From Glycera tridactyla (taxonomy: Eukaryota), in the NCBI GenBank assembly GCA_965644265.1, contig OZ286467.1, positions 45,756,001 to 45,820,000 of the forward strand: DNA of 64,000 nt, given 5' to 3'. Of the stretch, positions 468 through 27,439 are shown in pieces. The notes under the pieces are model-generated. The model did no database searches. It was not told the origin of the DNA and saw only the letters and a program-made list of their open reading frames with translations. The position numbers and the translations under genes are program-made. The first letter of the stretch is position 1; each line of letters begins with the position of its first letter.

Positions 468-566
468 ATAAGGTGTACCTGGTCGACTATGAATTCGCTG
501 GTTTTGATTACGTTGTGCTAGATCTTGCCTTTTTCCTCAGATGTGGCATCTATCGTAATTGCTTTG
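468..566 (+). CDS. Choline/ethanolamine kinase-like paralog A, internal exon (DxE / choline-kinase motif exon)
   Basis: ttgcag|...|gttagt, 99 bp, phase 1/1. Translates (D)KVYLVDYEFAGFDYVVLDLAFFLRCGIYRNCF, matching ETNK-type 'VQFIDYEYSGYNYLAYDIG'. Same length and phase as paralog B exon 23862-23960. Confidence 0.9.
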
Positions 567-759
567 GTTAGTATGACGTCATCATAATCAGTATGTGTAT
601 TGACGTCACCATAAACGTGACGTCTACTGACCACGCTGCCCCCTATACCTTCACAGACACCCCCACCACCCACCACCTCATAGACCAAACACCACCGCCT
701 TAACCTCCTAGGGGAGCAACATGGAGAAATGGTAGCGTCTTCACACTTTACCCAAATGT

Positions 760-1340
760 AAAAGGATTGTAGCTGTCTTGATGGATGCTAATCTTGACTT
801 TCAACCCACTCTCTACAGCAAGTAAATAAAGCACACAGAATCCTGGGACTCATTAGAAGAGGGTTCACCCATCTTGACAGGGAAATATTCAAGCAATTGT
901 TCACCACCATTGTTAGAACCCAACTGGAATACTTTACAGCTGTCACATCCCCAATGTTCAAAACAGATTTTGATCTACTCATGTCTGTCCTTCAAAGGGG
1001 AAATAAACTTATCCCTGGCCTATGAAACAAACCATTTAAATTAAGATTAAGAGGGCTAGACATCCCCAGCATGACCTACCGCAGCCTGAGGGGAGACTTA
1101 ATAGAAGCCTGGAAGATACTGCGCCACAAATAAACCATCGATAGGGACATCCTTTCTCTCAGCCAATTATTAGTTACCCGAGGCCCTTGAATTAGCCAAA
1201 CCATCACATAACCACCAAATCCGAAAGCACTTCTCCCACAAGATAGTGAACACTTGGAACAGCCTCCTCAAAACCATCGCCGACGCCCCTTCAAAAAACA
1301 GATTCGACAAACACCTCAAACATTATATGCACTCACAAAC
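760..1340 (+). mobile_element. CR1-clade non-LTR retrotransposon, degenerate 3' RT fragment (intron of paralog A)
   Basis: Translates VNKAHRILGLIRRGFTHLDREIFKQLFTTIVRTQLEY...RSLRGDLIEAWKIL, a typical CR1 RT C-terminus, with stops and frameshifts. Confidence 0.8.
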
Positions 1341-1659
1341 CATGAGTGTGCCATGCTATTTGTTGCTATATTCCGTATAAATGAGCAGCAGACAGGCTCC
1401 ACAGCCTTATGGTCTGAAAAGGATACACCAGAGTGTCAATGACACCGAAGTTCATCTGGTCCTGTATCGGTACATGCATACCAATACTAATCGCAGATTT
1501 TTGAATGAGGCTCATTGAGTAGGACACACAACCATGAATGTATACATGAATGCATGTACACACACATACACACAAACTCTTACTATATAGGTACCCAATA
1601 CACACACTCACCAATCATTTAGAAGAAAAATCGAAAAAAAAAAATCTTTCCCGAATTCA

Positions 1660-2365
1660 ATCAGGCTAGTCGAGTAGACAAAATGAATGAATTCATAACA
1701 CAGGTGAGAACAACAAAGACATTGTCAGTTATGGAGAATGTTACATAACAATGAAAGCAAGGTCATTAGAAGTGTCGTTCATTACCTGGAGGTCTCACAA
1801 AATACAAAGTGAATGGGTCTCGTCAATTTCTGCTAAAAGGCTTGTACACAAATGTAATCCAAATAGCATAATTACCAGGTTGTGAACAAGAACGTCACAC
1901 AAGTTTAATGCACAATGCATTTTTCTCGTTAATGAACAAAATCAGAATGAAAATCCATCGAGAATTGAGGGAGGAATCATAGTTCCAGTGCTTCTCAGAT
2001 AATGAGTCAATTAACTTGGTCACCCAGTCGTTAAGAAGAATTGACCAACTTTTGTGTGCAATGCTTGTATCTCACCAATGAAATAGACAGGATCGATATC
2101 CATTGAGGATTGAGGGGGGGGGGGGGTACGATTTTAGTGATTCTTGGATGATTACCTAATTGACATATTTAACAAGTCGTTAAGGAAAATCTCACACAAA
2201 ATGCGATCAAGTTATGTGTGCAATCATTGGTTCTGACCAATAAAACAATCAGAATCAAAATCCATTGAGAAATGACGGAGGAGATACAATGTCTGAAGTG
2301 TGGACGGCGACGGACGACGCGCGATTGCATAAGCACATCAACTTTTGGCCAGATGAGGTAATGCT
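1660..2365 (+). mobile_element. Probable non-autonomous Helentron-like (HINE/DINE-type) element with internal ~150-bp tandem repeats
   Basis: Three diverged units (core 'aaaatccattgagaattgagggagga' near 1950, 2100, 2257) followed by a gacgg microsatellite and a terminal hairpin-like 'agcacatc...gatgaggtaa'. The 5' boundary is uncertain. Confidence 0.45.
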
Positions 2366-2505
2366 ATATCATATGGAACCCATGGACACCCTGTGTCGTT
2401 GTTGTTGTTGTTGTTGTTGTGTTTTTCTATAGTGTTATTGTTGTCGTTGTGAATGTTTGTTGTTTAACGAGTTGTTTACTTTCTTGATTTGATTGATATT
2501 GACAG

Positions 2506-2663
2506 CGCATTGTACCACTAAAGAGACCCGGATGTCTGACGCACAGACAAGGGACCTGATAAGATACTACCTGGAACGACGGAACACTCGGCGAGGTCAT
2601 CCACGATTGGTTGGCGCTGATGACATTGAGCTGACCTTAGTCGAGATACAGATAGCCTCTCTG
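2506..2663 (+). CDS. Choline/ethanolamine kinase-like paralog A, internal exon
   Basis: gacag|...|gtgggt, 158 bp, phase 1/0. (A)HCTTKETRMSDAQTRDLIRYYLERRNTRRGHPRLVGADDIELTLVEIQIASL aligns to paralog B exon 25318-25478 and to the ETNK 'WLRAYL' helix region. Confidence 0.85.
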
Positions 2664-2735
2664 GTGGGTCATCCCCGAATGTTTTCTCTGGTTGGTTGTA
2701 TGTTTCACGTACCGAGGGCACCGTCTGGGTTATAT

Positions 2736-2841
2736 TGCAACGTTAGGCGAACTTACCTTAGTGTAGGTTGAGGAGCATTATACTTAGTGTGTCCCTTCTC
2801 AGTCTTTTAGAGCTCATATGAATAGAGAGGCCTGCGCATGC
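2736..2841 (-). repeat. DIRS right ITR (2789-2841) plus 3' terminal extension (2736-2788)
   Basis: gtgtcccttctcagtc...atatgaatagagaggcctgcgcatgc is the inverted copy of 9925-9976. 2736-2814 is the reverse complement of 2938-3016 (74/79 identical). Confidence 0.92.
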
Positions 2842-24994: not shown

Positions 24995-25144
24995 GGAAAA
25001 CATGACATACCTGCCTTAAGCACCCACTTTTGGAAATCCTTCCAGAGTATTTCTCACTATGATTGACATGTATTAGACAACCACCTGTCTTAAGCAACCA
25101 CTTTTTACTGTCCCAAAGGTGGTTGCTGAATACAGGTTTGACTG
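24995..25144. mobile_element. MITE copy (same superfamily), 3' part
   Basis: Ends 'ggtggttgctgaatacaggtttgactg|ta'; internal 'accacctgtcttaagcaaccact'. Confidence 0.65.
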
Positions 25145-25317
25145 TACATACTTCTCCAGGTTGATGGGTACCGGCGAACCTCAACCAAACCAAAATTAAC
25201 AGATATTTCAATGATGATGAAACGAATAGGAAGTGGAATCGCCATTCGGTGTCAAAATGGTGAGAAATCCTGGAGAAAATATCCGAAACTATAGTCTATT
25301 GTGCTCTGTATTGATAG

Positions 25318-25478
25318 ACCATTTCACGCCCAAAGAGACAGCGTCCAGCAAGGATGAGATTCGTGACTGGATCCGACATTATCTGCTGCAGAGACTTCTA
25401 TTGGATGGACGGGACTCGGACACAGTTAGTGAAGAACATATACAGCTAGTAGAGATTGAAATGGACATCATGGAAGTG
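25318..25478 (+). CDS. Choline/ethanolamine kinase-like paralog B, exon 7
   Basis: gatag|...gtg|gtgaga, 161 bp, phase 1/0. (D)HFTPKETASSKDEIRDWIRHYLLQRLLLDGRDSDTVSEEHIQLVEIEMDIMEV matches 'QSQWLRAYLEAY...EVTEKEVE'. Confidence 0.9.
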
Positions 25479-25903
25479 GTGAGATCAGAATTGGTATTAT
25501 NNNNNNNNNNNNNNNNNNNNNNNNNNNNNNNNNNNNNNNNNNNNNNNNNNNNNNNNNNNNNNNNNNNNNNNNNNNNNNNNNNNNNNNNNNNNNNNNNNNN
25601 NNNNNNNNNNNNNNNNNNNNNNNNNNNNNNNNNNNNNGACAGGGACATACATACATAGATACCTACACCGACACACTTGCACAAACAGACAGACAGACAG
25701 ACAGGCAGGCAGGCGGAAGGCAGATAGACAGGCCCACGTTTTCCACCGGACCATAAAACGCACCAAGCAAGCATCTAAGTAACAAATAATCCATTCAACC
25801 AAGCAACCATCCATTCAACCTACCATCCGATCATCCCACCAACCAATTATCCAACCAAGCAAGCGTCCAATGAGGCAATGCTTTCCTTTCTTTTTTCTTG
25901 TAG

Positions 25904-25971
25904 TTCATGCATCTGTTTTGGCACACAGTGAAGCGGCATACTCTGACCACGAATATTCCACTACCATTAGC
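25904..25971 (+). CDS. Choline/ethanolamine kinase-like paralog B, exon 8
   Basis: Long pyrimidine tract-tag|...gc|gtgagt, 68 bp, phase 0/2. FMHLFWHTVKRHTLTTNIPLPL(A). Confidence 0.9.
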
Positions 25972-27064
25972 GTGAGTACCCCAATGACAGAATTCAGGAA
26001 TCCAGCATTTCAAGGACTTTAAGGATTTCAAAATACTATATTTACACTGGAGAAGGAATATGCTGGAGTGCACATCTCCCTCTCTTCCTAGTAATCCATA
26101 TTCGCAGCACATAAACCTATATCCATGGATACTAAATAAGTATTAAACTCCCTGCACGTGCATCATTGACTCAACTTGACAATCACTGTTCCCAATACAT
26201 ACTGTGTGATGATTGCGGTGTTTCAGGACCTAAGATACGTATCCACCCAGAAACTGAATATAAGTGTGTAATATTCACATTACAGAATTTCATCAAACAA
26301 CTAAGTCGACAAATATAAATCGAATCTAGACCTCAGCCAGGGATCAGTGGTTCTCTGATGATAACTGGGAAATATACGATATTGTGTGAATAATGTAGCC
26401 TATCAGACAGCAGGATAGAGGAATTTAGATGAATAATTGTGCTTTGGATTCATGTCTGATAACCTCGATTAATCGGTGAGAAAATGAGAATGAGTGATAA
26501 CTAAACTCACCGCTAGGTGGTGTTATTATGGCTGGCACCAACACCTACAGTTGCATCATCGTCTCATGGGCTCACATCACAATAATAGACTCGCAATTAA
26601 GTAGAGCTCCACCCAATAATACCGGATAACCATTACCATGGGGTTGCCTATAAATAATTGATACAGAAATCGAGCCAGTTGGGACTTGTCCTAAGGAAGA
26701 AATTGCTCTAGGGAACATGTTTCTGTATCTACCACCAGAGTATTTTCACTATGAGTTACATGCCTTAGCACAAAGTCCAAGTACATGGTAAATGGTTTCA
26801 TCACATATATTGGCTCCACGGATGGTTCAACCACAGAGCATCAGATTTTCTGAGAGGTGAGTAACTCCTGTGGCCCATGAACTAGACATATCAAGAGACA
26901 TATCTCAATATGATGGATCGCCTCTAGACCGTCCATGATTAAAGTGAACAGGAAAACTAGGCTTGTTGATCTTTAGCAGGCGTAATTGGTGGGCCCAAAA
27001 TGCAAGAATAAGGGTCCAGGACCGGGGCTCACCATCAGTATGAAGCTCTGCAACTTTGACTGTA

Positions 27065-27241
27065 CAGTCGAACCTCCCTATAAAGACCGCCTTCAGTCGC
27101 ACCAGAAAGTGGCCTTTACAGGGAGGTGGCTTTATAGAGAGGTCATTTACTGTAGGATATACTACCACGGTCGCAGTTCATGGCGGTCTTTATAGGGAGG
27201 TGGTCTTCATAGAAAGGTGGTCTTTAGAGGAGGTTTGACTG
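27065..27241. mobile_element. Intact 177-bp MITE with TA target-site duplication
   Basis: ta|cagtcgaacctccctataaagacc ... ggtctttagaggaggtttgactg|ta; lies in the last intron of paralog B. Confidence 0.85.
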
Positions 27242-27336
27242 TATATGGTTTTATCACATCTCCCTGTTTTATGGTTTGGGCAACTCAGGCTGTACCTTCA
27301 GTGACGGATATCTTTAAGCCGCCATCTTGTTTATAG

Positions 27337-27439
27337 ATTGTTCGAGGTCTCACGTAATGGGTACTACTCACTGAAGCCAGCCCTTCCACGTCTGTGTGAG
27401 CAACACCAACAACTGAAAAAGAAGCTGGAGTCCAGATGA
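27337..27439 (+). CDS. Choline/ethanolamine kinase-like paralog B, last coding exon
   Basis: tttatag| acceptor, phase 2. LFEVSRNGYYSLKPALPRLCEQHQQLKKKLESR* matches 'IVRFNQYFKMKPEV'. The nine exons sum to 1041 nt (346 aa + stop) with consistent phases. Confidence 0.85.

What the first reader, a model, noticed from the sequence alone, without database searches (positions are those of the whole stretch)
468..27439. Tandem pair of choline/ethanolamine kinase-like genes with a rebuilt substrate pocket
Seen: two same-strand paralogs with matching intron phases and about 55% identity in the DxE exon (18/33). Catalytic HxDxxxxN (visible in B) and DYE (both) are intact. The conserved choline/ethanolamine kinase segment 'YDIGNHFNE' is replaced by FDFVYLLRG (B) and LDLAFFLRC (A), followed by a shared novel IYRNC[YF], and 'FFWGLW' keeps only its first Trp (LFWHTV / LLWHIL). 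Knowledge: these acidic and aromatic residues line the amine-binding pocket in choline/ethanolamine kinases. Inference: this is an active but neofunctionalised, lineage-specific small-molecule kinase family acting on a substrate other than ethanolamine or choline; loss of the Glu with a nearby conserved Arg hints at a neutral or acidic one.
Basis: partly seen in the sequence, partly recalled or inferred. Interest (0 to 1): 0.72.

Follow-up and report, generated by a model that had tools for sequence, protein, structure and literature searches.

The report
Divergent choline-kinase-like tandem gene pair
Two neighbouring genes in this probably annelid genome encode kinases built like choline/ethanolamine kinase that keep the phosphate-transfer residues but have lost the residues that hold the charged amine, so they probably act on some other, still unknown small molecule.

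Summary
On the + strand there are two same-orientation paralogs.

- **Gene B** is complete: 9 exons, 18258-27439, all AG/GT, 1152 nt, 383 aa, no internal stop.
- **Gene A** shows only its last four exons: 468-12347, 145 aa, open.
- The four shared exons have the same phases and almost the same sizes. Protein identity is 39% overall and 53% in the DYE exon.
- All N gaps lie in introns or between the genes.

Four B exons hit Pfam Choline_kinase in order along the profile, each weakly. The catalytic Asp and Asn (HGDVTHYN) and the DYE are present. The published choline kinase motif fails at its Asn (Asp here) and at its final Glu (Gly in B, Cys in A). WxxW has become WxxV in B and WxxI in A.

A 1.84-billion-protein search with the catalytic exon found one relative, a 1260-base contig. 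It carries two homologous exons of identical length. Synonymous sites are saturated (pS 0.80) and pN is 0.23, so selection is purifying.

This is a conserved, probably active, divergent subfamily. Its substrate is unknown, and the idea of a neutral or acidic substrate is only a hint.

Searches and folding of the joined protein were left out by rule. Interest is moderate.

The parts
468..566 (+). Gene A, DYE exon (window starts inside gene A; earlier exons lie upstream of the window). Holds DYEF, LDLAFFLRC, IYRNC.
   Evidence: Acceptor AG at 466-467, donor GT at 567-568. 53% identical to the matching B exon. Pfam Choline_kinase 15.1 bits, profile 181-204.
2506..2663 (+). Gene A, exon after the DYE exon (158 nt, phase 1 to 0).
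   Evidence: tblastx match to B 25308-25394, 48% over 29 aa. Splice sites AG/GT.
11552..11619 (+). Gene A, FLHLLWHIL exon (68 nt).
   Evidence: Same size and phase as B 25904-25971.
12231..12347 (+). Gene A, last exon with TAA stop.
   Evidence: tblastn match to the B last exon, E 3e-4. Acceptor seen. The A partial reading frame is 145 aa without a stop.
18258..18389 (+). Gene B exon 1 (ATG at 18258; the start is not verified, and an acceptor-like site at about 18285 could mean a further upstream exon).
19267..19419 (+). Gene B exon 2: P-loop GGFLN and VVVRVYG strand.
   Evidence: Pfam Choline_kinase 14.4 bits, profile 3-49. Splice sites.
20220..20341 (+). Gene B exon 3: FFQNGVVYQYAVG (N-lobe/hinge).
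   Evidence: Pfam Choline_kinase 19.5 bits, E 7e-4, profile 50-89.
22375..22545 (+). Gene B exon 4 (171 nt; SIARSLADLH helix).
   Evidence: Found through its homologue in L001 122-292, same length, 68% aa identity.
23002..23144 (+). Gene B exon 5: catalytic loop LTHGDVTHYN.
   Evidence: Pfam Choline_kinase 12-13.5 bits, profile 139-182. Homologue P0001/L001 847-989 has the same length.
23862..23960 (+). Gene B exon 6: LDYEF, FDFVYLLRG, IYRNC.
   Evidence: Pfam Choline_kinase 16.6 bits, profile 181-204. PDB profile hits to choline kinases 1nw1 and 4da5.
25318..25478 (+). Gene B exon 7 (161 nt). Its end at 25478 lies 22 bases before the gap that starts at 25501.
25904..25971 (+). Gene B exon 8: FMHLFWHTV (68 nt).
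27337..27439 (+). Gene B exon 9 with TGA stop at 27437-27439.

Best explanation
A and B are old tandem duplicates of a gene for a soluble kinase of about 380 residues. The kinase descends from the choline/ethanolamine kinase branch of the protein-kinase-like (APH-type) fold.

The ATP and phosphotransfer machinery is kept:
- the GGxxN loop
- the Arg of the VVVRVYG strand
- the catalytic Asp and Asn of HGDVTHYN
- the metal-binding Asp and Glu of LDYEF

So the proteins most likely still transfer the gamma-phosphate of ATP to a hydroxyl group.

The elements that hold the positively charged amine in choline/ethanolamine kinases are gone:
- the final Glu of the choline kinase motif
- the second Trp of WxxW
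- the loop Tyr
- the C-terminal Tyr

They are replaced by a segment of the LDLAxFL type common in other APH-fold kinases, plus Arg/His residues conserved between the paralogs. The acceptor is therefore probably not choline or ethanolamine but another small molecule, possibly uncharged or anionic.

Shown: the gene structures, the motifs, the paralogy and the selection. Inferred: catalytic competence, the pocket location of the substitutions, and the change of substrate.
For: - **Gene model.** B is a complete 383-aa frame over 9 canonical GT-AG exons. A is a 145-aa open 3' part.
- **Shared exons.** Sizes and phases match, and exon-only similarity runs at 39% identity over 140 aa.
- **Family.** Four B exons hit Pfam Choline_kinase in profile order: 3-49, 50-89, 139-182 and 181-204, at 12-19.5 bits each. 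A rough sum is about 63 bits against a cut-off of 29.
- **Solved structures.** A profile of the DYE exon finds choline kinases from C. elegans, human and Plasmodium among solved structures. Human CHKA 4da5 aligns at residues 325-343.
[quoted passage not shown] It states that the final Glu makes the charge-charge contact with the amine.
- **Where the motifs fail.** In B and A the spacing is kept, but the Asn is Asp and the Glu is Gly or Cys.
- **Choline cage.** It consists of Tyr333, Tyr354, Trp420, Trp423, Phe435 and Tyr440 (PMC4814829). Counting from the motif Asp (human Asp342), B has Asn at +12 where Tyr354 sits. Its Trp is at +74 against +78 in human, followed by WxxV in B and WxxI in A.
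- **Selection.** B against contig L001 has exon lengths 171 and 143 nt in both, 68% aa identity, pN 0.23 and pS 0.80 (saturated). The introns cannot be aligned. A against B gives pN 0.42 and pS 0.83.
Against:
- No single exon reaches the Pfam cut-off, and exons 1, 4, 7, 8 and 9 hit nothing.
- The joined protein was not searched or folded. Family placement and pocket mapping therefore rest on motifs and spacing, not on a structural alignment.
- The catalytic loop reads HGD, as in APH and RIO kinases, not HND. The best PDB hit of that exon is RIO1.
- The P-loop Ser/Thr that contacts the substrate hydroxyl is Leu in B (GGFLN). The T29A change at this position cut LicA activity to about 10%.
- Gene A's 5' half, which would hold its catalytic loop, lies outside the window.
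Confidence: 0.6

Rival explanations
1. They are still ordinary ethanolamine or choline kinases of the Kennedy pathway, and the pocket has merely drifted.
For: Best Pfam family is Choline_kinase. Size, exon order and catalytic residues fit. The first Trp and an aromatic residue at the Tyr333 position are kept.
Against: The amine-pairing Glu is replaced in both paralogs, and so is the second cage Trp. By fixed spacing the loop Tyr is also replaced. These residues are conserved from bacteria to humans according to PMC4364537. The catalytic exon finds no canonical kinase at E <= 0.001 in 1.84 billion proteins.
Confidence: 0.12
2. One or both are non-catalytic proteins (pseudoenzymes) or recently silenced pseudogenes.
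For: No expression data. The P-loop Ser/Thr is Leu in B. Strict Brenner and choline kinase motifs are not met. Gene A is seen only in part, and one of its introns is 8.9 kb and holds a retroelement.
Against: All exons seen are open with canonical splice sites despite saturated synonymous divergence. pN is well below pS against L001. The catalytic Asp, Asn and Asp-x-Glu are kept in every copy where they can be seen.
Confidence: 0.15
3. They belong to another APH-fold small-molecule kinase family (APH, EcKL, or the methylthioribose kinase/PsiK type) and only resemble choline kinase.
For: The HGD catalytic loop and the LDLAxFL segment are typical of those families. The DYE-exon profile also hits 4-hydroxytryptamine kinase 9eto through that segment. 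There are weak APH and EcKL hits on the DYE exon and a weak APH hit on the catalytic exon of L001.
Against: The N-lobe exons 2 and 3 hit only Choline_kinase, the latter at E 7e-4. All four hits are collinear on that one profile. APH and EcKL appear on at most one exon of a given gene copy, at 11-14 bits.
Confidence: 0.1
4. The gene models are artefacts of assembly, with exons brought together across gaps from different places.
For: Seven N gaps lie within the span, and continuity across them cannot be tested.
Against: Exon order follows the Pfam profile. The phases give one open frame. A and B show the same structure independently. L001 carries exons 4 and 5 on one ungapped contig.
Confidence: 0.03

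Closest known systems
Ethanolamine kinase / choline kinase (ETNK1/2, CHKA/B, C. elegans CKA-2; Pfam PF01633)
   Same: Size is about 380 aa. The order of elements is the same: P-loop GGxxN, the Arg strand, F-x-N-G...G hinge, catalytic H-x-D-x4-N, D-[FY]-E-[YF] with the following [FYW]-D at the motif spacing, and a Trp about 75 residues later. It is the best and only collinear Pfam family, and the DYE exon aligns to 1nw1 and 4da5.
   Different: HGD instead of HND. The motif Asn is Asp. The NHFxE segment is replaced, so the amine-pairing Glu is lost. WxxW has become WxxV or WxxI. No Tyr sits at the Tyr354 or Tyr440 spacing. The P-loop Ser/Thr is Leu. The C-terminal third hits no profile.
Other APH-fold small-molecule kinases (aminoglycoside phosphotransferases PF01636, ecdysteroid kinase-like PF02958, 4-hydroxytryptamine kinase PsiK 9eto)
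   Same: HGD catalytic loop, and D-L-A/G-x-F-L after the metal-binding Asp. Tandem, fast-diverging paralogs are typical of such families (own knowledge).
   Different: The N-lobe exons match Choline_kinase and not these families. Their hits on the window's genes are confined to the DYE exon (APH also on L001's catalytic exon) and stay below cut-off.
Bacterial choline kinase LicA
   Same: Same fold, and its paper gives the motif set used for the test.
   Different: LicA keeps the Glu, both Trp and the Tyr of the choline pocket. A and B do not.

Membership tests
Choline/ethanolamine kinase (PF01633) | Pfam match at or above the gathering score (29 bits) | tested here: inconclusive
   Only exon-by-exon scans were allowed. 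Exons 2, 3, 5 and 6 give 14.4, 19.5, 12.3-13.5 and 16.6 bits at collinear profile positions. Each is below 29, and the rough sum is about 63. The joined protein was not scanned.
Choline/ethanolamine kinase (PF01633) | Brenner phosphotransferase motif (CS)HNDhX3N (PMC4364537) | tested here: not met
   B reads T-H-G-D-V-T-H-Y-N and L001 reads C-H-G-D-V-T-H-Y-N. The catalytic Asp and Asn are present, but Gly replaces Asn of HND. The looser HxDxxxxN is met.
Choline/ethanolamine kinase (PF01633) | [quoted passage not shown] | tested here: not met
   The spacing is kept in both genes. D, E, the aromatic residues and the second D are present. The Asn is Asp in both, and the final Glu is Gly (B) or Cys (A).
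Choline/ethanolamine kinase (PF01633) | Aromatic cage for the amine: Tyr333, Tyr354, Trp420, Trp423, Phe435, Tyr440 (PMC4814829) | tested here: not met
   - Tyr333 position: Phe, by HMMER alignment to 4da5.
- Tyr354 position: Asn, by fixed spacing from the motif Asp.
- Trp420 position: Trp.
- Trp423 position: Val (B) or Ile (A).
- Phe435 position: a conserved Pro at the +15 spacing.
- Tyr440 position: no conserved aromatic at the +20 spacing.

This mapping is by sequence spacing only, not by structure.
Choline/ethanolamine kinase (PF01633) | P-loop GGx(S/T)N with the Ser/Thr that contacts the acceptor hydroxyl | tested here: not met
   B has G-G-F-L-N. The Asn is kept, and the Ser/Thr is Leu. 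A's P-loop lies outside the window.
Protein-kinase-like (APH-type) phosphotransferase fold | Catalytic loop HxDxxxxN followed by a metal-binding Asp about 20 residues later | tested here: met
   HGDVTHYN and LDYEF in B. DYEF in A. HGDVTHYN in L001.
Aminoglycoside phosphotransferase family (PF01636) | Pfam match at or above 23.2 bits | tested here: not met
   11.5 bits on B's DYE exon and 13.6 bits on the catalytic exon of L001, and nothing on the N-lobe exons. The joined protein was not scanned.
Ecdysteroid kinase-like (PF02958) | Pfam match at or above 22 bits | tested here: not met
   13.0 and 13.7 bits, on the DYE exons only.

The most novel reading that the evidence does not exclude
A and B, with the contig L001 copy, are the first seen members of a worm-restricted clade of choline-kinase-fold enzymes that has switched from amino-alcohols to an uncharged or anionic acceptor. 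Arg/His residues conserved between the paralogs stand where the acidic and aromatic cage used to be. Such a clade could serve a lineage-specific phospho-metabolite pathway or a detoxifying phosphorylation.
Probability: 0.3. Interest if true: 0.65.

Novelty: new variant of a known kind. Interest (0 to 1): 0.38.

Why it matters
Choline and ethanolamine kinases are among the most conserved enzymes of phospholipid synthesis, and the residues of their amine pocket are kept from bacteria to humans. A selectively maintained offshoot that keeps the catalytic core but discards that pocket would be a natural example of substrate switching on this fold. It would also point to an unknown phosphorylated metabolite in worms. 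It opens no long-standing question. Many uncharacterised kinases of this fold exist in invertebrates, so the value lies mainly in giving a clear, testable candidate.

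Tried and rejected
- **RNA evidence.** Expression and splicing remain untested.
- **Word search with the catalytic-exon ORF.** It found nothing. The same search with P0001 found only P0001 itself. The earlier search had missed P0001 although the two share nine 5-residue words, so blanks from this tool mean little for such short queries.
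- **Big representative search with exon 5 (47 aa).** It gave one hit, P0001. No full-length relative was obtained, so no tree and no reference alignment could be built.
- **Metagenome scan with the exon 5 alignment.** It returned only the same contig again.
- **Exact look-ups of two window ORFs.** Neither is on record, so the window's own assembly could not be identified. Paper searches for GCA_013332675 and JAAUYI gave nothing.
- **Solved structures, exon by exon.**
  - Exons 2 and 3 gave nothing.
  - Exon 5 gave RIO1 only.
  - The exon 8 profile gave chance hits to dockerins.
  - Only the DYE exon reached choline kinases.
- **Joined spliced protein.** It was built only inside scripts, to check frame, length and A/B divergence.
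- **Missing-exon idea.** I considered that a missing exon might hide in gap 22674-22869. This was rejected: exon 4 lies at 22375-22545, before the gap, and the frame closes without anything more.
- **dN/dS as a number.** Synonymous sites are saturated in both comparisons, so only pN and pS are reported.
- **Third word search.** It was not spent, because the chance of a result was low and the cost is high.

Full report
**1. What is in the sequence**

Reading the DNA around them gives clean exons.

Gene B has nine exons:
- 18258-18389
- 19267-19419
- 20220-20341
- 22375-22545
- 23002-23144
- 23862-23960
- 25318-25478
- 25904-25971
- 27337-27439

All are flanked by AG and GT. Joined inside a script, they give 1152 nt, 383 codons and a TGA stop, with no internal stop.

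I found it because the only database relative carries its homologue.

Gene A enters the window in mid-gene. Its last four exons (468-566, 2506-2663, 11552-11619, 12231-12347) give 145 open codons and a TAA stop. A and B are separate genes, with about 5.9 kb between A's stop and B's ATG.

**2. Paralogy**

The four shared exons have sizes 99/99, 158/161, 68/68 and 117/103 nt, with identical phases. They match at the protein level in the right order:
- E 3e-11
- 48% over 29 aa
- E 0.001
- E 3e-4

The introns show no similarity apart from simple repeats. Identity is 39% over 140 aa, and 17/32 in the DYE exon. Between A and B, pS is 0.83 and pN is 0.42. The duplication is therefore old, and both copies have stayed open.

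**3. Gaps**

All seven N runs between 468 and 27439 lie in introns or in the spacer between the genes. The frame never has to be carried across a gap.

The closest approach is 22 bases: exon 7 ends at 25478 and the gap starts at 25501. The donor GTGAGA is fully read.

Continuity across gaps cannot be proven here. Three things support it:
- The exon order follows the Pfam profile order.
- A and B show the same structure independently.
- Contig L001 carries homologues of exons 4 and 5 on one ungapped piece.

I did not fill or look up any gap.

**4. Family**

A spliced model may only be searched exon by exon, so I did that.

Pfam gives Choline_kinase (PF01633) for four exons:

| Exon | Profile positions | Bits |
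|---|---|---|
| 2 | 3-49 | 14.4 |
| 3 | 50-89 | 19.5 (E 7e-4) |
| 5 | 139-182 | 12.3-13.5 |
| 6 | 181-204 | 16.6 |

No single hit reaches the 29-bit cut-off. However, four hits to one family in collinear order are not a chance result. Exons 1, 4, 7, 8 and 9 hit nothing.

APH and EcKL appear on the DYE exon, APH also on the catalytic exon of L001, and RIO1 only on the catalytic-loop exon. All of these are weak.

Among solved structures, a two-sequence profile of the DYE exon finds C. elegans CKA-2 (1nw1), human CHKA (4da5, residues 325-343), CHKB and a Plasmodium choline kinase. It also finds 4-hydroxytryptamine kinase PsiK, through the segment after the second Asp.

The joined protein was not scanned, searched or folded.

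**5. Motif tests**

PMC4364537 defines the family's motifs:
- Brenner's motif: (CS)HNDhX3N

It states that the final Glu makes the charge-charge contact with the quaternary amine. It also states that four aromatic residues, two of them Trp three residues apart, form the pocket. PMC4814829 lists the human cage as Tyr333, Tyr354, Trp420, Trp423, Phe435 and Tyr440.

*Catalytic loop.* B reads THGDVTHYN. The Asp and Asn are present, but Gly stands for the Asn of HND.

*Choline kinase motif.* The motif is matched in spacing and in both Asp, the Glu and the aromatic positions. It fails at two positions:
- The Asn is Asp in both genes.
- The final Glu is Gly in B and Cys in A.

*Cage residues.* Using the HMMER alignment to 4da5:
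- The Tyr333 position is Phe.
- Counting on without gaps, the Tyr354 position is the Asn of IYRNC.
- The exon 8 Trp lies 74 residues (B) or 73 (A) after the motif Asp, against 78 in human. It is therefore very probably the Trp420 equivalent.
- Three residues later stands Val (B) or Ile (A), not Trp.
- There is no conserved aromatic residue at the spacing of Tyr440.

*P-loop.* It reads GGFLN, so the Ser/Thr that contacts the acceptor hydroxyl is Leu. The T29A change at this position left LicA with about 10% activity.

*What the paralogs share in these segments.* They share L-R just before the lost Glu, then I-Y-R-N-C, then W-H and an Arg five residues after the Trp. Conservation of these residues at 39% overall identity argues that the new segments are functional. 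That they line the pocket is an inference from spacing.

**6. Relatives and selection**

I searched the catalytic exon (47 aa) against 1.84 billion representative proteins. It found one protein at E <= 0.001: P0001, an 89-aa ORF (E 2e-12, 73% identity).

P0001 lies on a 1260-base contig, JAAUYI010175274.1 of GCA_013332675.1. The metagenome scan returned the same contig.

The contig holds homologues of B exons 4 and 5 with the same lengths (171 and 143 nt), the same phases and canonical splice sites, separated by a 554-base intron.

Over 103 codons:
- Amino-acid identity is 68%.
- Nucleotide identity is only 64%.
- pS is 0.80 (saturated) and pN is 0.23.

DNA similarity is confined to the exons. 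This is the signature of purifying selection.

I could not learn which organism the contig comes from, so it may be an orthologue in another species or another paralog. Either way, a third family member exists and is constrained.

The lack of other hits means no close full-length relative is in the library. Relatives below roughly 50% identity in this short exon would be missed, so 'lineage-specific' is only provisionally supported.

**7. Reading**

The best explanation is a conserved, probably catalytically competent offshoot of the choline/ethanolamine kinase family that no longer has the amine-binding determinants.

The substrate is unknown. The conserved Arg/His residues give a weak hint towards an uncharged or anionic acceptor.

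The rivals are listed with their tests:
- an ordinary Kennedy-pathway kinase
- a pseudoenzyme or pseudogene
- membership of another APH-fold family
- an assembly artefact

Notes from other agents call this genome annelid. I did not test that.

**8. Verdict**

This is a new variant of a known kind, of moderate interest. The decisive data are missing: transcripts, a full-length phylogeny, a structural superposition and an enzyme assay.

Noticed in passing
window 4561-9341, minus strand (inside the 8.9-kb intron of gene A): A run of long ORFs of 323, 520, 506 and 382 aa, typical of a DIRS-like retroelement. The 520-aa ORF has a reverse transcriptase domain (RVT_1, 36.6 bits) and a weak Dam-methylase-like stretch. 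The 323-aa ORF looks like a tyrosine-recombinase region by eye only.
   Followed up: partly
window 21106-21615 (+), inside B intron 3; and window 35377-36240 (-): Fragments of LINE-type reverse transcriptase (RVT_1, 33.9 and 94.1 bits). The first shows that B's introns have taken up mobile elements without damage to the exons.
   Followed up: partly
window 22546-22673, 11680-11805, 25640-25720 and other gap edges: Several N gaps are bordered by simple repeats such as (GA)n and (GACA)n. They may mark places where the assembly broke on microsatellites.
   Followed up: no
window 15670-16300 (+): About 600 bases of a degenerate short tandem repeat between genes A and B. It reads as PTYPPTH-like peptides in all three frames. 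It is probably a non-coding minisatellite.
   Followed up: no
window 22309-22542 (-) and L001 1-265 (-): The antisense strand of exon 4 is open in both sequences, and a gene caller took it as a gene on L001. This is a by-product of a conserved exon and not a separate gene.
   Followed up: partly
The word-index protein search missed P0001 when queried with the window's exon 5 ORF, although the two share nine 5-residue words. Blanks from that tool are weak evidence for short queries.
   Followed up: partly
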